Notes under the pieces: model-generated | The model's database searches: none | What the model was told of the DNA's origin: nothing | The model's input: the letters and a program-made list of their open reading frames with translations, nothing else | Program-made: the position numbers and the translations under genes | Sequence record: MW822008.1 | Strand: one strand, 5' to 3' | DNA: 64,000 nucleotides | In this document: one piece after another, positions 26,913 to 56,040 of the stretch | How the letters are laid out: every line of letters begins with the position of its first letter | How positions within the stretch are numbered: the stretch's first letter is position 1

Positions 26913-27155
26913 ATGAAAGTACTGACAGAAATAGAAATGTATCATAGATTTAATAAGTACTATCATTTACTTAAGCCTATACAGAGGATTAAATGTCCAT
27001 TTGAAGAGAAACAGGTTTTAATCTATGAGCACAAGTTCTTTGTATCATTAGGTACAGATCAACAAGAGTACTATTTGACGTTGTACTTGATTACATTAAT
27101 AGATTTAATTCACTATAAAACCAAACAAGCTAATAAAGAGAAATATGAAAACTAA
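26913..27155 (+). CDS. Family A paralog
   Basis: SLGTDQQE; start trimmed. Confidence 0.85.
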   Translation: MKVLTEIEMYHRFNKYYHLLKPIQRIKCPFEEKQVLIYEHKFFVSLGTDQQEYYLTLYLITLIDLIHYKTKQANKEKYEN

Positions 27156-27489
27156 TATACAACTCAAGGTATATAAATCATTTGAACATACATATATCAA
27201 AAGTAGTCTATGTAGAGATGTAATGGATTACAAGGGTAAGCCATTCACAATTACCTATGATTCTTATGTTAGTGATTTATATATATCATTTGTTAATTAC
27301 GAAAATAAAATATACAAGCACGTTGATATTAAAGATTTAAGTACTTTATCACCAGAGGAATACTTTCAGGAATCATTAGTATGGGATTTAGAGTTTCCTA
27401 TGCCATTAGTACATAAGATGATAGTACTAATGAAAGAATCTAAACAGGAGCCTAATGGTGATTATGAAGAACACACAGTTGAGTACTGA
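27145..27489 (+). CDS. Family B paralog
   Basis: EEYFQESLVWD. Confidence 0.85.
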   Translation: MKTNIQLKVYKSFEHTYIKSSLCRDVMDYKGKPFTITYDSYVSDLYISFVNYENKIYKHVDIKDLSTLSPEEYFQESLVWDLEFPMPLVHKMIVLMKESKQEPNGDYEEHTVEY

Positions 27490-27850
27490 TAATATTAAGA
27501 GTTATACAAGCTCAAGTACTGTGACAATCGAAGTGAATTCTATTAATGCTGGTAATGCAGTAGATAAGTTCTTTATTGCTCAAGGGTACAGGAAAGATAT
27601 TCATCAATATTGTTCAGTATATGGGGAGTACAATAGTACTGAAGATATAATTTATTGGTCAACACATCAAGATTATCTAACTAAAATTGGCGTTCCAGAT
27701 GTTAGTACTTTATCTGAAGAAGAATACTTTCAGTACAGCTTAGTACATGATGTACCTATACCTTTAGGGTTAATCAAGGGTATACAGGAAGAGGTTCATA
27801 AGCTTAAATCCATGAGTAAAGGTACTTTCATTAGAACAGTGCAATACTAG
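27455..27850 (+). CDS. Family B paralog
   Basis: EEEYFQYSLVHD. Confidence 0.85.
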   Translation: MVIMKNTQLSTDNIKSYTSSSTVTIEVNSINAGNAVDKFFIAQGYRKDIHQYCSVYGEYNSTEDIIYWSTHQDYLTKIGVPDVSTLSEEEYFQYSLVHDVPIPLGLIKGIQEEVHKLKSMSKGTFIRTVQY

Positions 27851-27851
27851 C

Positions 27852-27880
27852 TTGACAGTACTTTTCATTACTGATATAGT
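27852..27880 (+). promoter_or_regulatory. sigma70 promoter
   Basis: TTGACA-17-TGnTATAGT. Confidence 0.7.
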
Positions 27881-27911
27881 ACCTGTACGTTAATCATTAG
27901 GGTAGAAAATT

Positions 27912-28157
27912 ATGTTAAATTTTTTAAATTTCCTTATCGTCTTGTGTATTGTTCTTGGGATTGCACCATTTGTATTGTATTTCATGGATTCAGATGAAAT
28001 GCAGAAGATGAATTGCACAAGGACAGGACAGAGTAGAGTAGAGACGATTCTTATGCCTGTTACGGTTATTGTTAACAACATGCCCATTACGAACATGGTC
28101 CCTACCCTAACGACAACGTACCAGTACTCTTGTGCTGACGGAGAGAGGTGGAGATGA
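27912..28157 (+). CDS. Membrane-anchored hypothetical protein
   Basis: N-terminal hydrophobic helix. Confidence 0.7.
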   Translation: MLNFLNFLIVLCIVLGIAPFVLYFMDSDEMQKMNCTRTGQSRVETILMPVTVIVNNMPITNMVPTLTTTYQYSCADGERWR

Positions 28158-28465
28158 AATTTAATATAGCAAAAACATCTAATATATGTATATTTGGTTA
28201 TGCCGAAGAGTTGGGTGATATTGACATTCTTTTGTACAAAAAGGATGGTGTTATGCATTTCAAGTACCAGGATGAAGAGGCAGACAATTATCTTTTACCT
28301 AATTTAGTACAAATGCAGGAAGATGAATTATTCCAGTACAGCTTAGTATACGACATTGATATTTGCACGATGCCAGTACTAATTAGTATTCAAAAAGTGA
28401 TGCTCGATATGTATGATAAGCTAATACAAGGTATGTCAGGGAGGATCATTGAAATTGACATATAA
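28148..28465 (+). CDS. Family B paralog
   Basis: EDELFQYSLVYD. Confidence 0.85.
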   Translation: MEMKFNIAKTSNICIFGYAEELGDIDILLYKKDGVMHFKYQDEEADNYLLPNLVQMQEDELFQYSLVYDIDICTMPVLISIQKVMLDMYDKLIQGMSGRIIEIDI

Positions 28466-29404: not shown

Positions 29405-29607
29405 TGCAAAAGATTAATACGATAACATTAAATGCATTACAGGATTCATTATTAGATAGTATTAAGATGTATTACAATATACATTTGAAGGGTGGTATTG
29501 ATGATTACGATTATTATTTGAGTTTAATTACATTTGAGCACCTTTCAGTACAGGACAGGATTTTACATCCTACAAATCCTAGGTATCCATCGATAGGTAA
29601 ATTATGA
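29404..29607 (+). CDS. Hypothetical protein
   Basis: ORF, overlapping neighbours. Confidence 0.65.
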   Translation: MQKINTITLNALQDSLLDSIKMYYNIHLKGGIDDYDYYLSLITFEHLSVQDRILHPTNPRYPSIGKL

Positions 29608-30158
29608 ATGAGATAGAGTTATTAGCACACAAGATAAGTACAATAATGCTTATCCTCAATAACAACCATCCTATATCGCAGATAGATGGAATCCTGAGTC
29701 AGAGGACAGGTGGTAGTTTATATTTGTCCATAAACGCAGATATCGCAAGGAAATACATTGATATTGACATTGATGTTGAAATCGAATATGATACAACGGG
29801 GATTGTTGGTGTAGGTGCATTAATCAGTTCAAATCCAGTATCAGCATCCCCATTGACCAAAGATGTTAGTACAGGATTCGAAGGGTATTTGTGGTACAAT
29901 ACCAATGATGATTATTTTATATATCAGCATTCCAATACAAATTATGATGAAGACAAATTTCAGTTCATAGACCCTTATGATGAAGCTGAAGTATTTCAAA
30001 AATCATTAATCACAAAACCGCATGAGATGATGTATCTAATTTTATTCAGTACAATGCATTTGAATCCATTAATTAAAGGTTTAAAATTTTATATTCAATT
30101 AAATTTAGTCCATGTAGTTTATGATTTATTAATGCAAGGATATAGTTATGAAGTATAA
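29604..30158 (+). CDS. Family B paralog
   Basis: EAEVFQKSLI; close paralog of 30242. Confidence 0.85.
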   Translation: MNEIELLAHKISTIMLILNNNHPISQIDGILSQRTGGSLYLSINADIARKYIDIDIDVEIEYDTTGIVGVGALISSNPVSASPLTKDVSTGFEGYLWYNTNDDYFIYQHSNTNYDEDKFQFIDPYDEAEVFQKSLITKPHEMMYLILFSTMHLNPLIKGLKFYIQLNLVHVVYDLLMQGYSYEV

Positions 30159-30218
30159 AATGAAGTATAAAATGATGTATACCCCAAGATATGATTTATG
30201 TTGAATTAGAAGATGATG
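30148..30218 (+). pseudogene. Truncated copy of the 5' end of gene 30738
   Basis: Near-identical to 30738-30796 apart from a 12-bp duplication and a 1-nt insertion. Confidence 0.7.
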
Positions 30219-30241
30219 CATCCATCAATAGGTAATAATAT

Positions 30242-30748
30242 ATGAATGAGATAGAATTATTAGCACACAAGATTAGTACAGTAATGCTTATGCTCAAGAA
30301 TAATCATTCTATGCATAAGTACATTTATATAGGTGATTTACGCATAGAAGATAGATATGATAAATTATCGTTTTTGTTTAAAGATGAAAGTAATGCAAAA
30401 GTTTGTTTTGCAGCATTTGCCCAAGGCAATCCAGAACAAGCATCTCCTGTTATATACGAAAATAGTGAAGGGTATTTGTGGGTCAACACAAACGATTATT
30501 TCTTTTATGATTTGAAACAAAATGATGAAGTAGAAGCACGAATTGATTTAATTGATATTAGTTCAGATTGTAGTTCTGAATTATTTCAGAAATCGTTATT
30601 ATACAGTCCTCGTCAAATACATTATCTAAAGTTATTCAGTTCATTGTACGCGAATCCTTTAATTAAGGGTTTTAAATTTTATATCAAAATTCCGTACCTT
30701 TCAAACGTTTATGATATTTTGATGCAAGGATATAGTTATGAAGTATAA
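30242..30748 (+). CDS. Family B paralog
   Basis: SELFQKSLLY. Confidence 0.85.
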   Translation: MNEIELLAHKISTVMLMLKNNHSMHKYIYIGDLRIEDRYDKLSFLFKDESNAKVCFAAFAQGNPEQASPVIYENSEGYLWVNTNDYFFYDLKQNDEVEARIDLIDISSDCSSELFQKSLLYSPRQIHYLKLFSSLYANPLIKGFKFYIKIPYLSNVYDILMQGYSYEV

Positions 30749-31049
30749 AATGATGTATACCCCAGATATGATTTATGTTGAATTAGAAGATGATGACGAT
30801 GGGTGGAATTTGATTTATTCAAGAAGTTCAGGTTGGTACATGGCACATTTAAATGATTCGATAGTTACAGATTATTTTGTAGATTTCAATACATTATCCG
30901 ATGAAGAATTGTTCCAACAGCAATTAGTGATTGACACGGGTGGTTATGATGTCTTATTATTAAAAAAGATACAGAAAGCTGTTATTGATTTTAAGCCCAT
31001 GATATGGCAAAGGAAATATTATGACCTCGAAGTACCGTACCAGCAATGA
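30738..31049 (+). CDS. Family B paralog
   Basis: DEELFQQQLVID. Confidence 0.85.
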   Translation: MKYKMMYTPDMIYVELEDDDDGWNLIYSRSSGWYMAHLNDSIVTDYFVDFNTLSDEELFQQQLVIDTGGYDVLLLKKIQKAVIDFKPMIWQRKYYDLEVPYQQ

Positions 31050-31587
31050 TATTCAGTACACCTACGCTAATGCAATCCTTATGGGACAAAAGTTAGCTTG
31101 TATTGTTGCAGCCTTATATAATGCACAGAAAGATTACAAGCGTCACATCCACAAATGTATTGGTATTATTCCATCGAAGTACAATACATATATTACGTGC
31201 ACGAGTCATTTTGATAAACGATTCAATACACCTGATAACCCAAATGCCCGTAGTGTTATTGGTCTTTTGGATTTTGCCCCTGGGGCTGTTATTGGAAAGA
31301 ATGATTTAGAGTACGCATGGTATAATAAAAATTCCCCATTAGTAATGGTAACATATAATAAAGAAACGAACAAAACAATAGAGTACAATACATATAAATC
31401 AGAGGAAGAATTTTTCCAAGGTTCAATGCTTGTACCAGTGCGTTTGTTATTTTATAATGTCATAATGAGTACAGTACACAATAGTCCATTACACAAGAAT
31501 CACAAAATTAATTTCAATTTTTGTGCTTATGCGATTGATGGTGTTTATGAGTGCTTAATGGAGATATTGAGTTATGAAGCTGAATAA
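31021..31587 (+). CDS. Family B paralog
   Basis: EEEFFQGSML. Confidence 0.8.
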   Translation: MTSKYRTSNDIQYTYANAILMGQKLACIVAALYNAQKDYKRHIHKCIGIIPSKYNTYITCTSHFDKRFNTPDNPNARSVIGLLDFAPGAVIGKNDLEYAWYNKNSPLVMVTYNKETNKTIEYNTYKSEEEFFQGSMLVPVRLLFYNVIMSTVHNSPLHKNHKINFNFCAYAIDGVYECLMEILSYEAE

Positions 31588-31915
31588 TACATTTGATATT
31601 AATAAGTTAAGAGAATGGTTTTATAGTATTGAAATTGAAGCCATCCCGTATCATAGATATGAACAATATAATTTAACCAGTATTGATATCAGTGAGTTGT
31701 ACGCGTATTATCAAAGTGCATTAGAGATGCATAAGTTATTTTTGAGTACAGATTTTGTTCTAAATTACAATTTTGAGGAATTTAAAAATTATAATTTAGT
31801 ACAGAAATATGTAGTAGCAAAGTACATGTACAATCAAGGAATCAAAGGTTGCATCGAATTCAATACCGTTCTTGTTTTAGTTGAGGTAATTTTATGCACC
31901 GCATGTCTGATTTAG
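31574..31915 (+). CDS. Hypothetical protein
   Basis: ORF. Confidence 0.7.
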   Translation: MKLNNTFDINKLREWFYSIEIEAIPYHRYEQYNLTSIDISELYAYYQSALEMHKLFLSTDFVLNYNFEEFKNYNLVQKYVVAKYMYNQGIKGCIEFNTVLVLVEVILCTACLI

Positions 31916-32400
31916 AGTTCAGTTTAGATGCAGCATTTAAATTTGTTCACAAAATAGAAACAATATACAGTACATTATGTGCAATAACATCAGTATCAAA
32001 AGAGCTTGATGTTGGTGAAAGGTATCAGGTGTGGAATAATTCATTTTTTAATAAAGAACATTCTTCGACGGCATTTTATATTTTAGCATTTAATCCCACC
32101 AATTGTTACCCAGAGAAGCATGAACGTTATCCGAATGACGACATGTGGTTTGAGTACAAAGAAGATTCTTATATGTCGTCAATTGTAGTTCCTGATGATT
32201 TTAATGCACAAGATTTAACAGAAGAGTGGTGGTTCCAGCAGAATTTAGTACATGATGATATTGATTTATTTTTCTATATTGCATTTAAAATGCTTTATCA
32301 CAACAATATAGTTAAAGAAAGTGTATCGTTTTCATGTCTATATATTGATGATTTGTACAATGAAATTCAAATAAACATGCCCAGAACGCCTGTATCGTAA
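31894..32400 (+). CDS. Family B paralog
   Basis: EEWWFQQNLVHD. Confidence 0.85.
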   Translation: MHRMSDLEFSLDAAFKFVHKIETIYSTLCAITSVSKELDVGERYQVWNNSFFNKEHSSTAFYILAFNPTNCYPEKHERYPNDDMWFEYKEDSYMSSIVVPDDFNAQDLTEEWWFQQNLVHDDIDLFFYIAFKMLYHNNIVKESVSFSCLYIDDLYNEIQINMPRTPVS

Positions 32401-32415
32401 GATATGGGCTTTTTT
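32388..32415 (+). terminator. Intrinsic terminator
   Basis: GCCTGTATC-GTAA-GATATGGGC plus T6. Confidence 0.75.
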
Positions 32416-32425
32416 CGTTTTGGTA

Positions 32426-32454
32426 TTGACATAGAAGACCAAAGCTGTTATCAT
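32426..32454 (+). promoter_or_regulatory. sigma70 promoter
   Basis: TTGACA-17-TGnTATCAT. Confidence 0.7.
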
Positions 32455-32482
32455 GTGTAATCATTTTAAAGGAGAACATATA

Positions 32483-32995
32483 GTGAGTTTCATAATCCCA
32501 AGTACATACGAAGATGCATCAAGTGCAGTTCATAAGATTCATTATATTTTTAATTTAATTATTAGATCTGCAAAAATTAAAATGTATGCACCTCTTGTGA
32601 CAAATAATCGAAATGAAGAAATTTTTATTAGCACAGACAAAATTATTTTTCCATCTTTCCATGAAGATAGATTGTGGTTCATGCATTTAGCTGCATTACA
32701 AAAATATAAAATGTCAATTCGTAATAATTTGGATATACCGTTATATCATCCTGATATTGGAGAGGATGAATATTTTCAGTACAGTACAGTACACCGCCAT
32801 GAAGATATCTTTGTTGCTATGCTTATTGCTAAATTGAATACCGTTGATTTGGAGCAGCACAAATATAATAATACATCATGTAAGATCATAATCCCTGCAT
32901 TCATAGCTCTTTATGATTATGTGGTGCATAACATAAAAGATGATACATATGCTTTCAATGAAGAGTATTTGGATTTTTTTAAGGAGAACATATGA
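32483..32995 (+). CDS. Family B paralog
   Basis: EDEYFQYSTVH; GTG start after AAGGAG. Confidence 0.8.
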   Translation: MSFIIPSTYEDASSAVHKIHYIFNLIIRSAKIKMYAPLVTNNRNEEIFISTDKIIFPSFHEDRLWFMHLAALQKYKMSIRNNLDIPLYHPDIGEDEYFQYSTVHRHEDIFVAMLIAKLNTVDLEQHKYNNTSCKIIIPAFIALYDYVVHNIKDDTYAFNEEYLDFFKENI

Positions 32996-33522
32996 GCAGT
33001 ACAACAGTACAGAAAGCAATGTCATTCAATGAAATTGGTACATTTAAAGATAAGATCATTGATTGCCTTGAATACATGATTTGTAGTAATATCGAAAGTA
33101 TCGAGATATTTAACAAGACAAATCGCTCTTACCATATGATGTACATTGCAAACAATAATGGTATCATTCCATTTATTTCGGATAGTACAATATGGTACGC
33201 ATGTGATACGAAAAAAACCACAATAGGTTTACATTTATTTGAGACACATTATGATCTAATTATTCCTGAACATTGTATGCAAGAAGAAGAATATTTTCAA
33301 ATGCAATGTATACATTCACCATTAGTGTTGTTTAGTTTATATATTATACCTTATATCACCAAATGTGTTCATGAGAATAAAGCTCCGTGGAATCATGAAT
33401 TTGTATCGTTGAAGTTATTGTATAATGTATTAGTAGAATATTATGATTACAGGCACAATGGTACAATCAGTGATGTATGGGATTTTGAATCGCTAAGGGT
33501 GAAAACATACACAGGTGAATGA
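32992..33522 (+). CDS. Family B paralog
   Basis: EEEYFQMQCIH. Confidence 0.85.
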   Translation: MSSTTVQKAMSFNEIGTFKDKIIDCLEYMICSNIESIEIFNKTNRSYHMMYIANNNGIIPFISDSTIWYACDTKKTTIGLHLFETHYDLIIPEHCMQEEEYFQMQCIHSPLVLFSLYIIPYITKCVHENKAPWNHEFVSLKLLYNVLVEYYDYRHNGTISDVWDFESLRVKTYTGE

Positions 33523-34138
33523 TATGACCAGAATTAAAATGTATGATTTGATGCAGTACAGTAAAATTGCCATTCCAGTGCTTAATAAAGTGCTGGATGC
33601 ATTCATTGCCAAATACCCTGAGAATTCAGTGTTATGTATTCCATTTAGCGTTCCAGATAAAGATGATATATTCCAAGTGAATGTCAGTACACGTGGTATT
33701 ACATTACAGCAGAAATACATGGATACGGAATATTATGGAATAAAGTTGGATTCAGTACAGGGTTCAAAATCAGCCTATGATTTTTTTGTTCCTAATAATA
33801 TAGAGTCATGGGAAACAAACATTTCAAAGAAAGATGAAAATGATGTTCCTATTAGTGGTGTGTTCAACAATAAAGTTTTTTATTATTACGAAACCGACAA
33901 ATTCCCTGAAGAGTTATATTACAATTCAGAAATGAATGAAGATGTAGATGCATTCATGTTTCAATTATCTTTAGTACATGATATCATTGATGTTCAAGAG
34001 TTAAGAGCAGAAATCAATTTAGCTAAAGAGTTATCGGACATGCTGCCACCGTTTAGTATGCTTTTTTGTGAAGGTGGTTATTTTTCAAAAGAAGTGTTTG
34101 AACATTTCGTAGATGTTGTAAAAGGGTTGGATATATAG
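33515..34138 (+). CDS. Family B paralog
   Basis: AFMFQLSLVHD. Confidence 0.85.
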   Translation: MNDMTRIKMYDLMQYSKIAIPVLNKVLDAFIAKYPENSVLCIPFSVPDKDDIFQVNVSTRGITLQQKYMDTEYYGIKLDSVQGSKSAYDFFVPNNIESWETNISKKDENDVPISGVFNNKVFYYYETDKFPEELYYNSEMNEDVDAFMFQLSLVHDIIDVQELRAEINLAKELSDMLPPFSMLFCEGGYFSKEVFEHFVDVVKGLDI

Positions 34139-38676: not shown

Positions 38677-38677
38677 A

Positions 38678-48680: not shown

Positions 48681-48700
48681 AGACCCGTATGGGTCTTTTT
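48679..48700 (+). terminator. Intrinsic terminator
   Basis: AAAGACCC-GTAT-GGGTCTTT plus T. Confidence 0.8.
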
Positions 48701-48711
48701 GTGTTTATGGC

Positions 48712-48740
48712 TTTACAAGAGCATTCAGGTGTGTTATACT
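48712..48740 (+). promoter_or_regulatory. sigma70 promoter
   Basis: TTTACA-17-TGnTATACT. Confidence 0.7.
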
Positions 48741-49334: not shown

Positions 49335-49915
49335 ACCATATCAGAACTAAAATTTTGAGACTCATGCATGACATTGCAGAACTTTCAGAGATTCATGACA
49401 TTACAGAAATTGTTGAATTTGATAATTATCGACTGAAAATTGAAAACAAATCCAAACATCGTTTTGGTTCAGTTCAGTTGGATGTATATAAAACTTATGA
49501 ATTTTCTAAAAAAATTAAAAGTTCATGGGATACGATTACTATGTACATTCGCACATCCAGAAATCGTGAACGTATTGGTTCTATTTCTTCTAATATGGTA
49601 TTTGCGAATGCATTACATGAAAAAATGAATAAAATTGTAGAATCTGATTTCAGTGAAGATGATGGTTTTATTGGGTTGGATGTTCCACCAGAATTAGACC
49701 AAAGTGAAGATATTCGAGATGCATTCATTTTCCAGAAATCATTGTTGGACAATTACAAAGAATTCGAGTACTTAATGCTTTGTTACGATACTGCAAAAGT
49801 TCTTGATTGTGGTGAACTAGTTATGTACAATGATTTTATCAATTACAAGACTGATGTTCTGAATACACTACTTCAAAATATAGAATCGGTTAAGGAAAAA
49901 TATGAACGCTTATAG
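49331..49915 (+). CDS. Family B paralog
   Basis: AFIFQKSLLD. Confidence 0.8.
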   Translation: MNHIRTKILRLMHDIAELSEIHDITEIVEFDNYRLKIENKSKHRFGSVQLDVYKTYEFSKKIKSSWDTITMYIRTSRNRERIGSISSNMVFANALHEKMNKIVESDFSEDDGFIGLDVPPELDQSEDIRDAFIFQKSLLDNYKEFEYLMLCYDTAKVLDCGELVMYNDFINYKTDVLNTLLQNIESVKEKYERL

Positions 49916-50483
49916 TTATATGACAGAACGCCATCAGTTATTATATGATATCAGTAAAAAAATGCTATCAATTGTTGGTAGTGCGAAAGAAATTGAAAAA
50001 CAATATCTCATCCGTGATGTATCAATTTCATCCAAATGTTGGTCAAATGAATATTACGACCACGGTATTCTTACTATTTCTGGGGCCAGAAATATTTGTA
50101 TTGTAAAAAATAAAAGTAAAAGTAATGAAGAGTGTGAGATTAGAACCGATATACAAATTAAGGATGATGGAAGTTTTTCACATCACCCATTCCATATTAG
50201 TACTATTGGTGTTTTATATAATATTAAAGTACTATTCGGTGATGAAGAGTATGTGTTAAAAGCTATCAATCCAGATTCAAGTACAGTTGAAGAAGAACTG
50301 TTCCAGATGAGCACTGTTATACCTGAAGAGGTTCTTAGTACTGTTGTTTTTTGTAGTTTAATTTATCATACATACAAAAAGAACCAATTCGATTTCCACA
50401 TTTTAGGAACGTACATCTTCAATACTTTGAATGTTGATCGTTTAAAAGCATTAAATGCAGCAATGGATAAGGTGCTACAATGA
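49902..50483 (+). CDS. Family B paralog
   Basis: EEELFQMSTVI. Confidence 0.85.
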   Translation: MNAYSYMTERHQLLYDISKKMLSIVGSAKEIEKQYLIRDVSISSKCWSNEYYDHGILTISGARNICIVKNKSKSNEECEIRTDIQIKDDGSFSHHPFHISTIGVLYNIKVLFGDEEYVLKAINPDSSTVEEELFQMSTVIPEEVLSTVVFCSLIYHTYKKNQFDFHILGTYIFNTLNVDRLKALNAAMDKVLQ

Positions 50484-50908: not shown

Positions 50909-51414
50909 GTTTATTAAATGCACGCGAATTAGTTGAGATGTATGAGATTTTGTCTTCATATAAAAATTCTCATGGAGATGTGATTCTCGACAAAAAGTTC
51001 CATGTCAGTGTTGAACATATATCAAATATAGATATGATTTCTTTGGTGGAAAGTGATAAGTCAGGTCTTGAACGCGATATCATGCGTTTGATTTATATTC
51101 CCAAACCATCATATACTAATGATAGTTCAATTAGTAATGAGACATTCATGTATAGTCCTGGTACGGATTCTACTATAGTATCGCTGTCCAATAAATCAAT
51201 GGGTACTTTCCAATTCATCTATACCAGTACTGATAACATTGAAGAAATTGAATTTCAAAACAATACATTAAGTCCATGTAGTAGTGTTATAACCTTTATG
51301 TCATATCTATGGTCAACTAAAACAAGTGCTGTTGTATATAGTTCAAATTATACACAAGATAGTATTGTTGAATCATATAAAGTTCTAAAGGAATACTATG
51401 AAAATAACAAATGA
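50905..51414 (+). CDS. Family B paralog
   Basis: EEIEFQNNTL. Confidence 0.75.
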   Translation: MSLLNARELVEMYEILSSYKNSHGDVILDKKFHVSVEHISNIDMISLVESDKSGLERDIMRLIYIPKPSYTNDSSISNETFMYSPGTDSTIVSLSNKSMGTFQFIYTSTDNIEEIEFQNNTLSPCSSVITFMSYLWSTKTSAVVYSSNYTQDSIVESYKVLKEYYENNK

Positions 51415-51979
51415 TTTTATTAAAAGTGTAGTACACCCTATGCTTAGTATTATGAAAAAAATACAGAATCTACCGGAAGATAACGATTACAAGTTTAATC
51501 GTTTTGATTCAGATGTGTTTTGTATTGAAATTGAAATTAATAACAATCGCAATTTACATTTAAAATTCAAAGAATCGTCAAGTCCGTACTACAACTTTGA
51601 TATGAATTTTAAAATAGATACTGACATTGAAGAAAACGTAATATCAAATCATACTAGCAAAAATGGTTTTATGCATAGAACTACTATGTACAATAATAAA
51701 AATAGTATTATATCTAAATGGAATCATCAATTCACTAAAATTTGTGAAATTGAATATAGTGATTTTGGTGAAGAGAATTACTTTCAGTTAAGTACAATTC
51801 ATGAACTTCCACCGTATGATTATGTTAAAACATGGTTTGATATTCATAATATAATTGATGATGCAATCAAACTTCCATTTGGTGTGTCAATATCATATAC
51901 TGCTCCTAAAACATTTGTTTTTACTGAAGATATGATTATGAAAAAGATATGGGCAATTATCCCACTTATGATGGATTAA
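51398..51979 (+). CDS. Family B paralog
   Basis: EENYFQLSTIHE. Confidence 0.85.
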   Translation: MKITNDFIKSVVHPMLSIMKKIQNLPEDNDYKFNRFDSDVFCIEIEINNNRNLHLKFKESSSPYYNFDMNFKIDTDIEENVISNHTSKNGFMHRTTMYNNKNSIISKWNHQFTKICEIEYSDFGEENYFQLSTIHELPPYDYVKTWFDIHNIIDDAIKLPFGVSISYTAPKTFVFTEDMIMKKIWAIIPLMMD

Positions 51980-51984
51980 ATTCG

Positions 51985-52022
51985 TACCAGGGGTTGACTC
52001 TGGTATTTTTGTATGATACATT
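51985..52022 (+). terminator. Terminator hairpin overlapping a promoter
   Basis: TACCAG/CTGGTA stem plus T5; TTGACT-17-TGnTACATT starts in the loop. Confidence 0.6.
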
Positions 52023-52040: not shown

Positions 52041-52592
52041 ATGAACTACAATCATGATCTTTTTACATTATGTGCATCCAAATGTGTTGATGGATGGACA
52101 GATAAAATCAATACCATAATTCATCGATATCTGGTCTTTAGTTCTCGTGCACGAAGTGAGGGGGCTATGGATTTCAAATATACACTATCTATTGATGGTG
52201 TAACTATCCATGCAGACGAAGAACGTCTGAGCATTAATTTGTATGATTCCTGTGTATTTGCTATTCACCAAAAGATGGGGAAAGGATGGGGTTGTAATAA
52301 CATTAACTCAAAAGCTATCTTTTGGGTTGGTCACCACCAGACAGTACTTGATCCTTCAATCAAATCTAATCTTTTATCCGATAATATGGTTTATGATTTA
52401 TTGTACTCCGAAGAACAACATTTTCAGTTAAGTACATTACATGATCTGGCACAGTACGAGGATTGTTACAAAACATTAGAACTATGCCATTCCCTTGAAC
52501 TTAAAGATAAATTGATACAAGTTTACCCTTCATTCTTTCATGAAGAAGTACAAAGTACACTAGATCATATTTTATATGGATACGATAAATGA
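52041..52592 (+). CDS. Family B paralog
   Basis: EEQHFQLSTLHD. Confidence 0.85.
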   Translation: MNYNHDLFTLCASKCVDGWTDKINTIIHRYLVFSSRARSEGAMDFKYTLSIDGVTIHADEERLSINLYDSCVFAIHQKMGKGWGCNNINSKAIFWVGHHQTVLDPSIKSNLLSDNMVYDLLYSEEQHFQLSTLHDLAQYEDCYKTLELCHSLELKDKLIQVYPSFFHEEVQSTLDHILYGYDK

Positions 52593-53191
52593 GAAAAAGT
52601 TATCAAGAAGCTATTGACTTAATTCGTGAAGTTATCAAGGTGGCTCCTGCTGCTATTGAGTTCAAGAAGTCCATATACAAGAAGTATGGTTCAATGTCGA
52701 GTATGTGCTTTCAAAAGAAACGTAGAGCATTCACTACCCAGTACTGGAATGATTCTATCATCCTGAGCAATGAGACTCAGCGTATTTTAACACTAGAATC
52801 TGAACCTAATGAGTACGGGGAAGGGAACATTTGTGTACCTGATTATGATGAAATTAACTTCAACTGCGGTGATTTTGAAACAACATTATTACTTCATGAG
52901 GGTTATCCAGAAGGTGATGTATTAGCTGAGTACAATCCAAAAACTAAAATTCTCAAAAGAGGAATCCAGTTCACTATTAATAACAAAGATGATGTTCAAG
53001 CAGCACTGATGCAACTGAGTACAAGTGAACCTATCACTATTAGTGTAGAAGAGTTATGGGGAATTATTTCAGTACTCAATGAGTGCTACAAAGTAAAATC
53101 ATTGCGTAAACACAGCATTATATTACATACCAATATGGCAAATATAAAATGTAAGCACATTCAAGAAATGGTGGTTCCAGATGGACTTTAA
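52589..53191 (+). CDS. Family B paralog (divergent)
   Basis: AALMQLSTS. Confidence 0.65.
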   Translation: MRKSYQEAIDLIREVIKVAPAAIEFKKSIYKKYGSMSSMCFQKKRRAFTTQYWNDSIILSNETQRILTLESEPNEYGEGNICVPDYDEINFNCGDFETTLLLHEGYPEGDVLAEYNPKTKILKRGIQFTINNKDDVQAALMQLSTSEPITISVEELWGIISVLNECYKVKSLRKHSIILHTNMANIKCKHIQEMVVPDGL

Positions 53192-53765
53192 AGAAATTGA
53201 AAGTAAATTAAAGTACTTCAAAGATATCAAACTTCTTTGGAAAAAGTATAAAGTTGATTACAATTTCAGTGATGATGAGACAATAAAATACATTGAGATT
53301 AATATCAAAATCAAGTTCAAGAATAATAATTATGGTGAAGTAACCTTAAATCATACTGGTATATCACTCAAGGACTATGATGGTACAACACTCGCATATT
53401 TTGACTTCACACCAGAACCAGGTGAAACACTACTTAGTGAGATAAATTCCTATGACATGGAAGTGTTCGGCGGGAATCCGTTACTGTTCCGACTTTCTGA
53501 AGAGTGGAGTGAAGAGTACTACACTTACAAAGATGGTGTAGTACTTGATATTCATGGAGAAGTTGTGAATGACTTGGAAGAACGTTTGTTCCAAGAATTG
53601 TGTGTTTCAAATACTTCATATGCATACAATCATATCCTTGACATGTTTGATTTATATAGTAAAATAGATGCTGAAATGAAGGCACATGGTATTCATTACC
53701 TTACAATTAACGACTATGCTCAACTCGAAACCGCTGTGAAAGCATTGACTAAAGTACTGAAATAG
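53181..53765 (+). CDS. Family B paralog
   Basis: EERLFQELCV. Confidence 0.8.
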   Translation: MDFKEIESKLKYFKDIKLLWKKYKVDYNFSDDETIKYIEINIKIKFKNNNYGEVTLNHTGISLKDYDGTTLAYFDFTPEPGETLLSEINSYDMEVFGGNPLLFRLSEEWSEEYYTYKDGVVLDIHGEVVNDLEERLFQELCVSNTSYAYNHILDMFDLYSKIDAEMKAHGIHYLTINDYAQLETAVKALTKVLK

Positions 53766-53774
53766 GAATGAAAT

Positions 53775-54188
53775 ATGAAACTGTATCATGCGAGTACTGT
53801 AAAAATTGATAACTTTTATATCCCGTATGGTGGTCTTCATATGGGAGGTAAACACAGTGCTTTGGAAGCTGCATTACGCAAGCTGAGAAGCCCACTGAAC
53901 GTAGTAGACGCATGTACAGTATACTTGCATACCTTAGAAGTTGATGTTGATAACGTGCTTCTGTGTGAAGATTTAGGCAGTGATGATGAGTGGCGTTCAC
54001 TTATTGAGAATTGCACTGCTCAAGGTTATGATGCTGTTCAGTACAAAAATGATTACGAGCCAGACAATGTTCCTAGCTTTATGATTTGGGATGCATCTAA
54101 AGTTCGCATCATTGAAGTTGATGCTATGCATATGGATGAAGCTGAAATGATTATCGAAGATTTTCTTGATGAATATGAAGGTGTATAA
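53775..54188 (+). CDS. ADP-ribosyltransferase-fold protein (tentative, ART-PolyVal-like)
   Basis: LYHAS strand, GLHMG, GYDAVQYKNDYE..S..IWD. Confidence 0.5.
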   Translation: MKLYHASTVKIDNFYIPYGGLHMGGKHSALEAALRKLRSPLNVVDACTVYLHTLEVDVDNVLLCEDLGSDDEWRSLIENCTAQGYDAVQYKNDYEPDNVPSFMIWDASKVRIIEVDAMHMDEAEMIIEDFLDEYEGV

Positions 54189-54724
54189 TGTCTGAACCGA
54201 TGGTAGCACTGGCACGTACAAAATTACTATTAAAGATTGGTGAGATTTTTACGGTTCTTCTGTCCAATAATATTGATATCACTGAGCTAGATATTAAGCA
54301 ACCGTGGGAAGTGACTATGTTCTCGGCGTTCCACCGATTGTCATATAAAGGTGAAAGTGTTCTTGATTTTAACCCTAAAGCAAAATTCATAGATTATGCT
54401 GCGTTGTACAGAGAGTTGCACAGAAATATTTATTCCGGTTGTATAACCAATAACTTCAAAGAAATTAAAGTTCAAACTGCATCACATGAGTTCAATGATT
54501 TACTTTATCCAGAATTTAATCTAACGGAAGAATTACTCTTTCAGTACTCGTTAATTCTCACAAATCTCGAAACACTAGAGTTCTACAAAGAGTTAGTAGA
54601 TATTTTTATGAATACACGACTTTCAAAAGATATTGTGATATTCTGGTATACAGAGCATGTTACGGAGGAATTGCTTACTGAATTTCTTCTAAATATGACA
54701 GCTATAAAGGAGAAGTTATGTTAG
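54188..54724 (+). CDS. Family B paralog
   Basis: EELLFQYSLI. Confidence 0.85.
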   Translation: MSEPMVALARTKLLLKIGEIFTVLLSNNIDITELDIKQPWEVTMFSAFHRLSYKGESVLDFNPKAKFIDYAALYRELHRNIYSGCITNNFKEIKVQTASHEFNDLLYPEFNLTEELLFQYSLILTNLETLEFYKELVDIFMNTRLSKDIVIFWYTEHVTEELLTEFLLNMTAIKEKLC

Positions 54725-55191
54725 ATATTTTAGGAAACATCGATACTGCAAATTATTTTATCCAGGACGCACTGTTCAATACAGTTCAACAAGGATTAGA
54801 AGTTCGTCATAACGTTTACCAAGGTGATGGTTATTTCGTTGATATTGTTGAGGCACGAAAGAATACGTTTAATGTTAACATTACAACACTGGGTAGACAG
54901 AACATTGCACGAATTTTAGTAAGTAAAGATGAAATTGTATTGAGATACAGTGCTAAGTTTATGTTGACTTATAAGAAAAAAACTGATATGTTCAGTACTA
55001 ATTTATTTGATGAGCCATTTGACCTTGAAGATATTGAAGCTACTTTCTTTACTCAAAGTACTATGGTAAAATACACTGATGTTCAATTTTCTGCTGATGT
55101 AATGTCAGAAACATTACAAATGATCAAGGTATTATTTTATGCATTTGAGCAATTTAGAGAAGAAAGAAACAAGGTTAACAACCACAGATGA
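54718..55191 (+). CDS. Family B paralog (divergent)
   Basis: EATFFTQSTMV. Confidence 0.65.
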   Translation: MLDILGNIDTANYFIQDALFNTVQQGLEVRHNVYQGDGYFVDIVEARKNTFNVNITTLGRQNIARILVSKDEIVLRYSAKFMLTYKKKTDMFSTNLFDEPFDLEDIEATFFTQSTMVKYTDVQFSADVMSETLQMIKVLFYAFEQFREERNKVNNHR

Positions 55192-55204
55192 ACTAATAGA
55201 GGCG

Positions 55205-55552
55205 ATGACTAAGGAGTCAAAATACCACAAAGGGATTCGTCTATATTTTATAGATATTGGTTCAATGGAAGGCATATACATTTATGGTTCACAATCTTTA
55301 TCTTATGATGTAATGCCAAAAAAACATGTAAAAATCTTTTTAGGTTCAAATAAAAAAACTTTCTTGACAATTAATGATAAAAACGTTATTATGAATTCGT
55401 TGGGTCATGATAAGGTGGAAATTGATCTAAACACACTGGAGGATATTGATTTTTTTCAATACGAGTGTTTAGGTGTTGACTTACATGGCATTAGTAGCGA
55501 TATGATAAAATCATTAATCAAATATTTCGAAGGTGTTCATAAATGTATCTAA
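55205..55552 (+). CDS. Family B paralog
   Basis: DIDFFQYECL; start uncertain. Confidence 0.7.
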   Translation: MTKESKYHKGIRLYFIDIGSMEGIYIYGSQSLSYDVMPKKHVKIFLGSNKKTFLTINDKNVIMNSLGHDKVEIDLNTLEDIDFFQYECLGVDLHGISSDMIKSLIKYFEGVHKCI

Positions 55553-56040
55553 CTAAATCAATGAAAAATTCATTTGATAAAATCAAGAGTTGTCTTGATG
55601 GGGAAAATATTACAAGTGTTACACAAACTGCTGACCAAATTCAAAGCAGTTCAAGTGATTGTACTGTTATTTTAGGTTTACATAGTCTACGTTTATCAAT
55701 AGTAAATAATATTGACAACACTGCTATTGTAATCACACCATGCCATATTCAAAATGAGAATGGTGTATATCTTCATCACATGGGAACAGTATTTCATATT
55801 TTCAATACAAACGAAAACATTGTTAAGGAATACAATACTCTTAATATTGATTCAGGTGAATTATTTCAAATGAGTACTTTGTACTCATGTAATTTTACAG
55901 ATACTTCATGTATTTTGCCATTTTTCTTGGAAATTATTAAGAAAATGGAAAATTTAAAACGTGAATACAATAAAGAAATGGTTCCTGAAGCTATATTAAA
56001 TATTACTAATGCTATAGAGAAGTATAATGCAGTGACTTAA
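55543..56040 (+). CDS. Family B paralog
   Basis: GELFQMSTLY. Confidence 0.85.
   Translation: MYLTKSMKNSFDKIKSCLDGENITSVTQTADQIQSSSSDCTVILGLHSLRLSIVNNIDNTAIVITPCHIQNENGVYLHHMGTVFHIFNTNENIVKEYNTLNIDSGELFQMSTLYSCNFTDTSCILPFFLEIIKKMENLKREYNKEMVPEAILNITNAIEKYNAVT

What the first reader, a model, noticed from the sequence alone, without database searches (positions are those of the whole stretch)
27145..56040. Family B: about 52 proteins with hypervariable N-domains and a shared C-terminal EE(Y/L)FQxS(L/T)V(Y/H/W)D module
Seen: 46 clear and 6 divergent copies of 100-210 aa over 29 kb. The N-terminal portions are mostly unalignable by eye, while the motif sits about 30-60 aa from the C-terminus, followed by an amphipathic helix. 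Local subfamilies exist (29604/30242; 36557/37463/37816; 38185-40054 GPWDSEEYYFQ). Inference: adaptor-like architecture, in which a constant module docks on one hub (phage scaffold, protease or RNAP) and variable domains sample many host targets. This could be an undescribed modular effector system occupying nearly half the window.
Basis: partly seen in the sequence, partly recalled or inferred. Interest (0 to 1): 0.75.

Follow-up and report, generated by a model that had tools for sequence, protein, structure and literature searches.

The report
Jumbo-phage array of FQ-motif proteins
A 29-kb stretch of the giant E. coli phage BF17 is filled with more than 40 diverged copies of one small, uncharacterised protein with an invariant Phe-Gln motif; the family is real and shared by all RaK2-like jumbo phages sampled here, but it looks like one fold rather than a two-part adaptor, and its function is still only inferred.

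Summary
The window is bases 1-64000 of Escherichia phage BF17 (Asteriusvirus, 383 kb). A profile of the C-terminal motif finds 40 + strand ORFs between 27145 and 56040 at E <= 1e-7 and none elsewhere. One more (34855) passes with a larger profile, and about 7 have only weak profile-profile support. The count is therefore 41 to about 48, not 52. Phe-Gln is invariant in 348 unique relatives.

An exhaustive search of 1.84 billion proteins finds the motif only in 49-219 aa proteins, always in the C-terminal half. In the collections scanned, members occurred only in contigs of 100 kb or more, including RaK2, GAP32, CBB, 121Q and Yersinia fHe-Yen9-04. No Pfam, NCBIfam or PDB match exists, and PHROGs splits the family into at least 25 "unknown" groups.

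AlphaFold models of a long and a short member (pLDDT 84-85) share one topology: a beta-meander, the FQ helix, a second helix, then a strand that must rejoin the N-terminal sheet. That argues against a separable module.

Genes overlap in a few sigma70-promoted units next to the terminal-repeat early region. The products are acidic and were not detected in the phAPEC6 virion. Orthologs are under purifying selection (dN/dS about 0.25).

Best reading: an old tandem multigene family of early intracellular binders. The function is inferred, not shown.

The parts
27145..27489 (+). family member, short form, 114 aa (SPEEYFQESLVWD)
   Evidence: module HMM E 1.1e-15
27455..27850 (+). family member, short form, 131 aa
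   Evidence: E 7.2e-14
28148..28465 (+). family member, short form, 105 aa (record starts it at 28154)
   Evidence: E 7.6e-14
29604..30158 (+). family member, long form, 184 aa (record starts it at 29724); recent duplicate of 30242
   Evidence: E 4.9e-15; 43% identity to 30242; DNA repeats D12, D16
30242..30748 (+). family member, long form, 168 aa
   Evidence: E 8e-16
30738..31049 (+). family member, short form, 103 aa
   Evidence: E 8.3e-14
31021..31587 (+). family member, long form, 188 aa
   Evidence: E 3.9e-16
31894..32400 (+). family member, long form, 168 aa
   Evidence: E 6.1e-12
32453..32995 (+). family member, long form, 180 aa
   Evidence: E 8.1e-11
32992..33522 (+). family member, long form, 176 aa
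   Evidence: E 2.4e-14
33515..34138 (+). family member, long form, 207 aa
   Evidence: E 1.7e-9
34343..34858 (+). family member, long form, 171 aa
   Evidence: E 9.5e-16
34855..35196 (+). divergent member, 113 aa (ARFQYETAYD)
   Evidence: E 3.6e-4 with the 348-sequence HMM, best shuffled 0.021
35135..35749 (+). family member, long form, 204 aa (record starts it at 35207)
   Evidence: E 3e-14
36449..36934 (+). family member (record starts it at 36596)
   Evidence: E 4e-10
36931..37095 (+). 54-aa ORF, relic copy of the 5' end of the 37463 gene
   Evidence: 85 nt at 96% identity, D15
37092..37463 (+). family member, short form, 123 aa
   Evidence: E 1.4e-14
37463..37819 (+). family member, short form, 118 aa
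   Evidence: E 1.7e-14
37816..38175 (+). family member, short form, 119 aa
   Evidence: E 3.2e-14
38185..38676 (+). family member, long form, 163 aa; modelled
   Evidence: E 3.2e-23; AF2 pLDDT 84.2, pTM 0.79
38678..39148 (+). family member, long form, 156 aa
   Evidence: E 2.6e-19
39145..39588 (+). family member, long form, 147 aa
   Evidence: E 2.4e-17
39588..40076 (+). family member, long form, 162 aa
   Evidence: E 5.7e-21
40054..40506 (+). family member, long form, 150 aa
   Evidence: E 1.2e-20
40503..40817 (+). family member, short form, 104 aa
   Evidence: E 1.3e-9
41122..41571 (+). family member, long form, 149 aa
   Evidence: E 9.8e-14; its N part relates to the 38185 group at hhalign 97%
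41568..42104 (+). possible divergent member, 178 aa (QCFQLSCTD)
   Evidence: hhalign 2% against 1.4% for the control; weak
42459..43019 (+). family member, long form, 186 aa
   Evidence: E 2.2e-12
43618..43980 (+). family member, short form, 120 aa; modelled
   Evidence: E 1.3e-15; AF2 pLDDT 84.6, pTM 0.78
43970..44305 (+). family member, short form, 111 aa
   Evidence: E 7.9e-11
44265..44849 (+). family member, long form (record starts it at 44295)
   Evidence: E 5.4e-14; one ortholog in each of 36 phage records
44909..45385 (+). family member, long form, 158 aa
   Evidence: E 4.2e-17
45382..45876 (+). family member, long form, 164 aa
   Evidence: E 1.2e-16
45842..46204 (+). family member, short form, 120 aa
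   Evidence: E 1.3e-17
46188..46601 (+). family member, 137 aa
   Evidence: E 4e-15
46589..47083 (+). family member, long form, 164 aa
   Evidence: E 7.1e-15
47067..47609 (+). probable divergent member, 180 aa, motif degenerate
   Evidence: hhalign 50%, E 1.6e-4, against 0.09% for the control; reciprocal best hit of a module-bearing RaK2 protein
47606..48169 (+). family member, long form, 187 aa
   Evidence: E 4.1e-13; full-length ortholog in RaK2 (29% identity, E 5e-15)
48162..48680 (+). family member, long form, 172 aa
   Evidence: E 6.3e-16
49331..49915 (+). possible divergent member, 194 aa (FIFQKSLLD)
   Evidence: hhalign 5.4% against 0.08% for the control
49902..50483 (+). family member, long form, 193 aa
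   Evidence: E 3.9e-14
51398..51979 (+). family member, long form, 193 aa
   Evidence: E 4.2e-13
52041..52592 (+). family member, long form, 183 aa
   Evidence: E 8.4e-8
52589..53191 (+). possible divergent member, 200 aa
   Evidence: hhalign 23% against 0.2% for the control
53181..53765 (+). possible divergent member, 194 aa (RLFQELCVS)
   Evidence: hhalign 38% against 1.1% for the control; HMM E 0.028
54188..54724 (+). family member, long form, 178 aa
   Evidence: E 2.1e-8
54718..55191 (+). possible divergent member, 157 aa
   Evidence: hhalign 5.4% against 0.1% for the control
55139..55552 (+). possible divergent member, 137 aa (DFFQYECLG)
   Evidence: hhalign 2.8% against 0.08% for the control
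55543..56040 (+). family member, long form, 165 aa; last of the array
   Evidence: E 1.5e-10
27852..27880 (+). sigma70-like promoter in a rare intergenic gap (TTGACA-17-TATAGT with TG)
   Evidence: conserved in ph0011
32388..32454 (+). terminator hairpin followed by a sigma70-like promoter (TTGACA-17-TATCAT)
   Evidence: the hairpin is conserved in ph0011
44846..44875 (+). consensus sigma70 promoter, 12 of 12 matches with TG, in a gap
   Evidence: conserved in ph0011
48679..48740 (+). terminator hairpin followed by a promoter (TTTACA-17-TATACT with TG)
   Evidence: 73 of 78 nt identical in ph0011
51984..52006 (+). terminator-like hairpin in a gap
30159..30241 (+). intergenic relic: a 92-97% copy of the 5' end of the 30738 gene, left by a tandem duplication of about 590-640 nt
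   Evidence: D13, D18

Best explanation
The region is a tandem multigene family specific to the RaK2-like jumbo phages. BF17 carries at least 41 paralogs, perhaps about 48.

Shown or predicted:
- Each gene encodes a small (103-207 aa), mostly acidic protein without long hydrophobic stretches.
- In phAPEC6, no product of the corresponding gene range was detected in the virion.
- The proteins have a single predicted alpha/beta fold. An antiparallel beta-meander of about five strands carries most of the sequence and indel variation. A conserved pair of helices follows. The first helix begins with (S/T)-E-E-x-(Y/L/F)-F-Q-x-S-(L/T)-(V/I)-(Y/H/F/W)-(D/N). A final strand then returns to the sheet.
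- Long forms add an N-terminal helix, which is weakly conserved, and a last helix.
- The family grew by unequal tandem duplication, of which relics remain. Much of that growth appears to predate the split of Asteriusvirus from the RaK2 lineage.
- Each paralog is kept as its own ortholog under purifying selection, while whole blocks come and go between close relatives.
- Genes overlap end to start in a handful of units, punctuated by conserved sigma70-type promoters and terminators. The array lies just downstream of the promoter-dense terminal-repeat region.

Inferred:
- The genes are transcribed early by the host RNA polymerase.
- The proteins act in the cytoplasm as a repertoire of binding proteins, each against a different host or defence component.
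- The helix pair with the FQ motif is the folding core, and possibly also a common interface. The variable sheet and its loops set the specificity.
For: Identity of the window: (100% match to BF17 at the same coordinates).

Family statistics. Motif frequencies over 348 unique proteins: F 100%, Q 100%, S 90%, E 81% and 76%.

Distribution:
- 130 hits in 1.84e9 proteins, all 49-219 aa with the module C-terminal; 85 of the 160 proteins retrieved are under 50% identical, or only partly aligned, to any window protein.
- The motif DNA scan finds true members only in contigs of 100-378 kb. By length these match GAP32, CBB, RaK2 (at least 20 members in four loci), 121Q and fHe-Yen9-04. The short contigs it also matched, which look like chance hits, hold none.
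- A distant member sits in a similar gene array on a 108-kb metagenomic contig.

No known family: Pfam and NCBIfam give nothing for all 40 members. PHROGs splits them into at least 25 groups of unknown function. PDB sequences give nothing.

Fold:
- Model of 38185: pLDDT 84, pTM 0.79; H3-22, five strands between 35 and 102, H113-120 (FQ at 117-118), H125-139, E145-148, H149-158.
- Model of 43618: pLDDT 85, pTM 0.78; five strands between 3 and 55, H64-77 (FQ at 68-69), H82-97, E111-117.
- Alignments covering most of the model, only to uncharacterised proteins of 121Q, SP27, slurp01, PBECO4, RaK2, GAP32 and Serratia BF.
- No credible match in PDB, AFDB or the ESM Atlas.
- Within the 38185 subfamily, residues 1-10 and 101-150 are conserved, and 41-70 and 91-100 are variable with indels.

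Organisation:
- 79 of 101 gene junctions in the wider 20.5-58.5 kb stretch overlap, and only 12 gaps exceed 40 nt.
- The best promoter and terminator matches lie in those gaps and are conserved in ph0011.
- Region 1-20 kb has 109 sigma70-like sites against 67 +/- 8 expected.

Expression by analogy: Asteriusvirus genomes have direct terminal repeats of about 21 kb (PMC13070987). The related CBB and PA5oct have an RpoD-promoted early region and early transcription of the terminal repeat that depends on the host polymerase (PMC5259590, PMC7318152).

Not detected in the virion: the phAPEC6 virion table lists nothing between gp347 and gp549, and the ortholog of 38185 is gp442c.

Protein properties: median pI 5.0, median net charge -9, no long hydrophobic stretch.

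Selection: 30 ortholog pairs between BF17 and ph0011 give dN/dS 0.27 for the N part and 0.23 for the C part. There is one ortholog per genome in 36 records.

Plasticity: only 6 of 36 records cover at least 80% of the array. One accessory member occurs in only 9 records.

Age: 12 reciprocal best pairs between BF17 and RaK2.

Duplication relics.
Against: - No experiment or database annotation bears on function. The binder-repertoire reading rests on analogy with small acidic early phage proteins and with multigene families of large viruses.
- Early expression is inferred from promoter consensus and position. No transcriptome of an Asteriusvirus was found. sigma70-like sites are not enriched overall in 20-60 kb. 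The family was not detected in the first 50 kb of PA5oct, the one relative with RNA-seq.
- dN/dS of 0.23-0.27, with no excess in the N part, is not the signature of an ongoing arms race.
- The fold statements rest on two AlphaFold models built from alignments of paralogs. Coordinates could not be inspected, so burial of the motif residues and the pairing of the last strand are deduced from the DSSP strings.
- The rest of the BF17 genome (64-383 kb) was not scanned for further members.
Confidence: 0.45

Rival explanations
1. Hub-docking adaptors. The conserved helix pair is a separate docking module that binds one common partner, such as host RNA polymerase, the ribosome, a protease or a phage factory component. 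The variable parts recruit many different targets to it.
For: F-Q is invariant, and E-E, S and D/N nearby are 76-90% conserved across 348 proteins whose N parts fall into 142 clusters. That is stronger conservation than a fold core usually needs. Several of the conserved residues are polar and could be exposed.
Against: - Both models are single compact units, and the C-terminal strand can pair only with N-part strands.
- The module never occurs alone in a larger protein or with a recognisable foreign domain among 130 hits in 1.84e9 proteins.
- The N parts have a similar size and the same order of secondary-structure elements in both classes.
- S/T-E-E and D/N sit where helix N-caps would sit, so structure may explain them.
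- No candidate hub could be identified.
Confidence: 0.15
2. Self-associating building blocks. The conserved half is a homo- or hetero-oligomerisation interface. The paralogs co-assemble into mixed intracellular structures or condensates during infection, and do not each bind a host target.
For: - Dozens of co-transcribed, translationally coupled paralogs would be made together in similar amounts.
- The conserved face is shared by all members.
- The weak structural resemblances are to oligomeric sheet-plus-helix proteins such as SsgA and p32/Mam33, but at Z of 5.2 or less, below the tool's noise level.
Against: - No coiled coil or repeat is present.
- No product of the corresponding gene range was detected in the phAPEC6 virion.
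- Array content differs by blocks between close relatives, which fits poorly with a fixed assembly.
- No direct evidence exists.
Confidence: 0.1
3. Nucleic-acid mimics or regulators. The acidic proteins imitate DNA or RNA, or bind the transcription or translation machinery, to switch off host gene expression or restriction. This would be comparable to Ocr/ArdA-type proteins, or to the expanded zinc-ribbon family of phage G.
For: 37 of 40 members are net negative, some at -20 to -26. The genomic context is of the early type. An expansion of about 35 copies of a putative DNA-binding zinc ribbon is known in phage G (PMC7824862).
Against: - The predicted fold is a compact sheet-plus-helix unit, not an elongated charge-patterned mimic.
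- There is no metal-binding or helix-turn-helix motif.
- Charge varies widely, and three members are basic.
- Forty paralogs are not needed for one mimicry function.
Confidence: 0.08
4. Processing or targeting signal. E-x-x-Y-F-Q-x-S resembles 3C/TEV-type sites (E-x-x-Y-x-Q, cut before S or G), and L-(S/T)-E resembles T4 prohead-protease sites. The motif would mark the proteins for cleavage or for packaging.
For: Sequence resemblance only (the protease site consensus sequences are from general knowledge). A T4-like prohead protease exists in these phages (phAPEC6 gp227c).
Against: - The motif lies in a helix with block-mean pLDDT of 95-97 in the long model and 80-95 in the short one, not in an exposed loop.
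- The residue after Q is variable.
- Nothing from the corresponding gene range was detected in the phAPEC6 virion.
- L at position -6 occurs in only 28% of members.
Confidence: 0.03
5. Decaying duplicates without function: genome filler that accumulated after the capsid enlarged.
For: Hua et al. proposed tandem duplication as a route to jumbo genome size and mention such an array in 121Q (PMC5646251). Relic fragments exist.
Against: - ORFs are intact, with dN/dS of 0.23-0.27 over 30 ortholog pairs at dS of about 0.5.
- Orthologs are retained across genera.
- Motif conservation is 100% for F and Q.
- Promoters and terminators are conserved.
Confidence: 0.02

Closest known systems
Multigene families of large eukaryotic DNA viruses (ASFV MGF110/360/505, poxvirus host-range families, 'genomic accordion' expansions)
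   Same: Dozens of diverged paralogs lie in same-strand tandem arrays near a genome end. Copy content differs between strains. The array arose by tandem duplication. A role in host interaction is presumed (general knowledge; review PMC13359090).
   Different: The host is a bacterium, and there is no sequence or fold relation. Here the paralogs are old and individually conserved, not recently amplified. The function is untested.
[quoted passage not shown]
   Same: The phenomenon is the same and in part the phage lineage too. Hua et al. 2017 (PMC5646251) note an array in 121Q in one sentence, repeated in a 2026 review. Iyer et al. 2021 describe the phage G expansion (PMC7824862).
   Different: None of these papers defines this family, its motif, fold or distribution. 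The 121Q sentence may refer to the neighbouring family A (31 copies, more similar to each other). Family B has no zinc ribbon.
Arrays of small early host-takeover or anti-defence genes of T-even, T5 and SPO1-type phages
   Same: Small, acidic, non-structural proteins of unknown fold, encoded next to the genome end, behind host-type promoters, in plastic regions (general knowledge).
   Different: Those regions hold many unrelated genes. Here one fold has been multiplied more than 40 times.
Polymorphic or modular effector systems (a constant trafficking or docking module joined to swappable domains)
   Different: The conserved part is C-terminal and structurally interwoven with the variable part. 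The variable parts are not recognisable foreign domains. The module occurs in no other architecture. No secretion or delivery apparatus is implied.
Sheet-plus-helix binding scaffolds (SsgA-like, polo-box, p32/Mam33/gC1qR, PH-like)
   Same: An antiparallel sheet is backed by one or two helices. p32/Mam33 proteins are also very acidic and bind many ligands.
   Different: Best Z is 5.2, below the tool's stated noise level of 7-8. Identity is at most 16% among the listed matches. The long-form model gives Z of 2.7 or less. This is a common arrangement, not evidence of kinship.

Membership tests
Any curated protein family (Pfam-A, NCBIfam) | Significant match to a family profile | tested here: not met
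   0 of 40 members match Pfam at E <= 0.01. NCBIfam gives only three stray single-member hits at E > 1e-3.
PHROGs phage protein families | Members fall in one PHROG with an annotated function | tested here: not met
   The 40 members spread over at least 25 PHROGs, all of 'unknown function'. Cross-hits are confined to the C-terminal part.
Viral tandem multigene family (lineage-specific expansion) | Many paralogs, same strand, contiguous, sharing a diagnostic motif | tested here: met
   40 members at E <= 1e-7, plus 1 more, within 29 kb and none elsewhere in the window. F-Q is invariant.
Viral tandem multigene family (lineage-specific expansion) | Evidence of tandem duplication | tested here: met
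   Gene-sized DNA repeats and two relic fragments. Adjacent members are more alike than permuted ones (0.232 against 0.204 +/- 0.010; 41 of 10000 permutations reach the observed value).
Viral tandem multigene family (lineage-specific expansion) | Copy content varies among related genomes | tested here: met
   Only 6 of 36 Asteriusvirus records cover at least 80% of the array. Sharing is block-wise, and one accessory member occurs in 9 records.
Viral tandem multigene family (lineage-specific expansion) | Role in host interaction or immune evasion | not testable with these tools
   Only indirect evidence: early-type promoters, not detected in the virion, acidic.
Modular adaptor or polymorphic effector architecture | Constant module is an independently folding domain separable from the variable part | tested here: not met
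   Both models are single units with pTM 0.78-0.79. The module's only strand (E145-148, E111-117) has partners only in the N part. These are predictions, not solved structures.
Modular adaptor or polymorphic effector architecture | Constant module recombines with unrelated domain types | tested here: not met
   All 130 hits in 1.84e9 proteins are 49-219 aa with the module C-terminal. The N parts match no Pfam family.
Modular adaptor or polymorphic effector architecture | A common partner (hub) that binds the constant module | not testable with these tools
   No interaction data exist, and no complex prediction was available.
Capsid-targeted internal or inner-body proteins (T4 IP and phiKZ type) | Present in the virion | tested here: not met
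   The phAPEC6 virion mass-spectrometry table lists no product between gp347 and gp549. The family ortholog is gp442c.
3C/TEV-type protease substrates | Site in an exposed, extended segment | tested here: not met
   The motif lies in a helix in both models, with block-mean pLDDT of 95-97 in the long model and 80-95 in the short one.
3C/TEV-type protease substrates | A Gln-specific protease encoded by the phage | not tested
   The rest of the genome was not examined.
DNA-mimic anti-restriction proteins (Ocr, ArdA) | Strongly acidic surface | tested here: inconclusive
   Median net charge is -9 and some members reach -26, but three members are basic.
DNA-mimic anti-restriction proteins (Ocr, ArdA) | Sequence or fold similarity to known mimics | tested here: not met
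   No match in the PDB by sequence or fold.

The most novel reading that the evidence does not exclude
The invariant FQ helix may be a true docking surface for one host or phage hub. The 40-plus paralogs would then form a phage-encoded repertoire of adaptors or inhibitors built on a previously unseen scaffold: a constant helical face and a hypervariable sheet. That would be a natural 'binder library' that a whole clade of Enterobacterales jumbo phages deploys early in infection against many host or defence targets.
Probability: 0.15. Interest if true: 0.8.

Novelty: new member of a known kind. Interest (0 to 1): 0.5.

Why it matters
About 7.5% of a 383-kb phage genome, and comparable arrays in RaK2, GAP32, CBB and Yersinia jumbo phages, is devoted to one protein family. 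That family has no name, no Pfam entry, no solved or recognisably related structure and no assigned function. Current phage databases do not even recognise it as one family.

This work provides:
- a defined motif, (S/T)EExΦFQxS(L/T)(V/I);
- a profile for the family;
- two confident models;
- a list of members.

With these, the family becomes searchable and testable. If the members are host- or defence-directed binders, the array would be a compact source of new inhibitors. It would also be a bacterial-virus counterpart of the multigene families of poxviruses and ASFV. If not, it still accounts for much of the 'dark matter' that makes these genomes jumbo.

Tried and rejected
- Word-index homolog search with the full-length alignment found only near-identical Asteriusvirus orthologs.
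Two degenerate DNA patterns were too strict or had too few fixed bases. A third pattern worked.
- Foldseek and VIA searches of PDB, AFDB clusters and the ESM Atlas gave nothing credible for either model. The protein-atlas feature search gave only noise, with scores of 0.46 or less.
- Family A (GTNYQE motif) is not related to family B by hhalign (0.3%).
- The 'Phi92_gp213' note on a ph0011 ortholog was not borne out. tblastn of that member hits only 36 Escherichia and Salmonella phage records and no phi92.
- The 'putative ADP-ribosyl transferase' label on the ph0011 ortholog of 53775 has no Pfam or PDB sequence support.
- No family member was detected in the first 50 kb of the RNA-seq-characterised relative PA5oct, so its expression data cannot be transferred directly.
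- Positive selection on the N parts was looked for and not found (dN/dS 0.27).
- A first hhalign all-against-all run timed out and was redone in parallel.
- Literature searches found no paper that characterises the family.
- Not done: a scan of BF17 beyond 64 kb, complete counts in the other genera, and inspection of model coordinates, which the tool does not return.

Full report
**Source of the window.** Megablast of 38000-46000 matches Escherichia phage BF17 (MW822008.1, 383,493 bp, Asteriusvirus) at 100% identity and at the same coordinates. The window is therefore bases 1-64000 of that record. Every CDS there is annotated 'hypothetical', apart from one DksA-type zinc finger at 12260. Related records are PBECO4, 121Q, phAPEC6, Sharanji, slurp01 and four Salmonella phages.

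**Checking the observation.**
- A strict regular expression finds 12 motifs.
- An HMM built from these and iterated on all + strand ORFs of the window converges on 40 ORFs. All lie between 27145 and 56040, each at E <= 1e-7. None lies outside that range.
- 890 shuffled ORFs give nothing better than E = 0.1.
- Phe-Gln is invariant in all 40.
- A second HMM from 348 unique relatives adds only 34855-35196 (E 3.6e-4; best shuffled 0.021).
- Profile-profile comparison of the remaining ORFs with the module gives weak hits, correctly placed, for 47067, 53181, 52589, 49331, 54718, 55139 and 41568. Reversed controls reach at most 1.4%.
- 47067 is in addition the reciprocal best hit of a module-bearing RaK2 protein.
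- Eight other ORFs in the range show nothing. Four are copies of the neighbouring family A.
- The count is thus 41 supported plus about 7 weak, out of 66 annotated CDS.
- Over 348 unique proteins the motif reads [ST]64% E81% E76% x [YLF] F100% Q100% x S90% [TL]96% [VIL]96% [YHFW] [DN]. It lies 32-73 residues from the C-terminus.

**The N-terminal parts.**
342 N-terminal segments fall into 142 BLAST clusters.
- An iterated search seeded with the N part of 38185 reaches only 8 window members.
- Only 11 of 595 cluster pairs reach 20% hhalign probability, against 0 for reversed controls.
- What signal exists lies mostly in the first 25 residues: an N-terminal helix shared by several long-form subfamilies.
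- Within the 38185 subfamily (42 sequences), residues 1-10 and 101-150 are conserved. Residues 41-70 and 91-100 are variable and carry indels.

**Distribution.**
- The exhaustive profile search of 1.84 billion representatives returns 130 proteins at E <= 1e-3. All are 49-219 aa with the module in the C-terminal half.
- All retrieved proteins contain FQ. Of the 160 proteins retrieved together, 85 are under 50% identical, or only partly aligned, to any window protein.
- Distant members sit on metagenomic contigs of up to 108 kb, again in arrays of small same-strand genes.
- A back-translated motif pattern scanned over IMG/VR hits 53 stretches. HMM-confirmed members occur only in contigs of 100-378 kb. 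By length these are GAP32 (358,663), CBB (378,379), RaK2 (345,809; at least 20 members in four loci), 121Q (348,532) and Yersinia fHe-Yen9-04 (354,378), plus unnamed jumbo contigs. The short contigs the pattern also matched hold none.
- The first 50 kb of Pseudomonas phage PA5oct holds none.
- In what was sampled, the family therefore appears confined to RaK2-like jumbo phages, all of whose named hosts are Enterobacterales.

**No known relatives.**
- Pfam and NCBIfam match none of the 40 members.
- PHROGs scatters them over at least 25 families of unknown function.
- A profile search of PDB sequences finds nothing.
- The literature holds only one sentence. Hua et al. [quoted passage not shown] This may equally refer to family A.
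- The RaK2 and CBB genome papers mention paralogs only in general terms.

**Structure.**
- AlphaFold2 with the 40 paralogs as alignment gives, for 38185 (163 aa), pLDDT 84 and pTM 0.79. The elements are H3-22, strands 35-39, 58-63, 79-82, 88-93 and 97-102, H103-107, H113-120 (FQ at 117-118), H125-139, E145-148 and H149-158.
- A 56-sequence alignment of short forms gives, for 43618 (120 aa), pLDDT 85 and pTM 0.78. The elements are strands 3-9, 14-25, 28-39, 42-47 and 53-55, H64-77 (FQ at 68-69), H82-97 and E111-117.
- The two classes share the same core order: five strands, the FQ helix, a second helix, then a strand. Long forms add a helix at each end.
- DSSP assigns a strand only where it is hydrogen-bonded to another strand. 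The single strand after the helices must therefore pair with the N-terminal sheet. The 'module' and the 'N-domain' are parts of one fold.
- Foldseek against BFVD aligns both models over most of their length, only to uncharacterised proteins of 121Q, SP27, slurp01, PBECO4, RaK2, GAP32 and Serratia BF. Among the significant matches TM is about 0.5-0.7 at 14-28% identity.
- PDB, AFDB clusters and the ESM Atlas give nothing credible. The best PDB Z is 5.2, to generic sheet-plus-helix proteins, below the tool's stated noise level.
- S/T-E-E and D/N lie where N-caps of the two helices would lie. Much of the polar conservation may therefore be structural.

**Genomic organisation.**
- Of 101 gene junctions between 20.5 and 58.5 kb, 79 overlap and only 12 leave gaps of more than 40 nt.
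- The best sigma70-like promoters and the terminator hairpins of the region lie in those gaps: 21112, 27852, 32388/32426, 44846 (12 of 12 matches), 48679/48712 and 51984.
- Those at 27852, 44846 and 48679/48712, and the 32388 hairpin, are conserved in ph0011, whose matched array segments are about 84% identical in DNA.
- Upstream, 1-20 kb carries a near-consensus promoter before almost every small gene: 109 sites against 67 +/- 8 expected.
- Comparison with fEgEco12, whose 20,993-bp terminal repeat was mapped (PMC13070987; offset), places the repeat at roughly window 1-20 kb.
- The layout is therefore: terminal repeat and early genes, then family A (21.2-27.1 kb), then family B (27.1-56.0 kb).
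- Relatives CBB and PA5oct have RpoD-type early promoters and early transcription of the terminal repeat that depends on the host polymerase (PMC5259590, PMC7318152). Early expression of family B is thus plausible but inferred.

**Properties and evolution.**
- Members are acidic (median pI 5.0, net -9, down to -26) and lack long hydrophobic stretches.
- The phAPEC6 virion proteome lists no product between gp347 and gp549, and the 38185 ortholog is gp442c.
- Thirty ortholog pairs between BF17 and ph0011 give dN/dS 0.27 for the N part and 0.23 for the C part, at dS of about 0.5. That is purifying selection on both halves, with no sign of diversifying selection on the N part.
- One tested paralog has exactly one ortholog in each of 36 records.
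- Array content is nonetheless mosaic. Only 6 of 36 records cover at least 80% of 27145-52000. An accessory member (P0105) is present in 9 records, inside the same array.
- DNA repeats show gene-sized duplications and two relics, at 36931-37095 and 30159-30241.
- Neighbours are slightly more alike than chance, but the median module identity is only 20%.
- Twelve reciprocal best pairs link BF17 and RaK2 members, one of them over the full length. Much of the diversification therefore appears to predate the split of the genera. The caveat is that only parts of the RaK2 genome were fetched.

**Interpretation.**
- Established: an old, conserved tandem multigene family of small proteins with one predicted fold that matches nothing solved. 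No product of the corresponding gene range was detected in the phAPEC6 virion.
- Inferred: early expression and a role as a repertoire of intracellular binders. On this reading the helix pair is the core and the variable sheet is the specificity surface.
A shared interaction through the conserved face cannot be excluded (rival 1).
- The self-assembly, nucleic-acid-mimic, processing-signal and junk-DNA readings are ranked lower, for the reasons given under each rival.

**Verdict.** The finding is a new member of a known kind, a viral multigene family. Interest is moderate because the family is large, clade-wide and entirely uncharacterised, but nothing found here points to a new mechanism.

Noticed in passing
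window 21175-27155, plus 28449-28661, 28610-28897, 42082-42300, 42278-42469: This is a second tandem family ('family A'). It has 31 proteins of 56-104 aa with a conserved L(T/S)xxEY ... GTNYQE..YV..YI..L pattern. 27 of them lie in one uninterrupted overlapping run, and four sit inside the family B array. Two tested members match phrog_4148, of unknown function. The family is unrelated to B by hhalign. [quoted passage not shown]
   Followed up: partly
window 1-20000: Almost every small gene is preceded by a perfect or near-perfect sigma70 promoter (TTGACA-16/17-TATAAT, or a recurrent TTGCAA-16-TATAAT variant). There are 109 sites against 67 +/- 8 expected, and 23 terminator-like hairpins against 12 +/- 3. 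The region probably corresponds to the direct terminal repeat of about 21 kb and the immediate-early region of Asteriusvirus.
   Followed up: partly
window 53775-54188: This 137-aa gene inside the array is not a family member. Its ph0011 ortholog is annotated 'putative ADP-ribosyl transferase'. Neither Pfam nor PDB sequences support that label, and it falls in phrog_11632, of unknown function.
   Followed up: partly
window 36931-37095 and 30159-30241: These are relics of tandem duplication. One is a 54-aa ORF that copies the 5' end of the 37463 gene at 96% DNA identity. The other is an intergenic 92-97% copy of the 5' end of the 30738 gene. Together they imply a duplication unit of about 590-640 nt.
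   Followed up: yes
window 12260-12517: A DksA C4-type zinc-finger protein is annotated among the promoter-rich early genes. It is a possible modulator of host RNA polymerase.
   Followed up: no
L057 (ph0011) against the window, 27-56 kb: Orthologous family B genes of the same two genomes differ widely in divergence: 55-95% protein identity and dS from 0.07 to more than 1.4. This suggests mosaic recombination among Asteriusvirus lineages within the array.
   Followed up: no
short-form members, e.g. window 43618-43980, residue Q89: Short forms carry a second nearly invariant Gln, in the helix after the FQ helix (pattern h-x-x-I/L-Q). It is at least 90% conserved in 56 sequences, and long forms lack it.
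   Followed up: no
window 27912-28157: An 81-aa ORF at the head of the second transcription unit begins with a strongly hydrophobic N-terminal segment (MLNFLNFLIVLCIVLGIAPFVLYF). It is the only membrane-like protein seen in the array.
   Followed up: no
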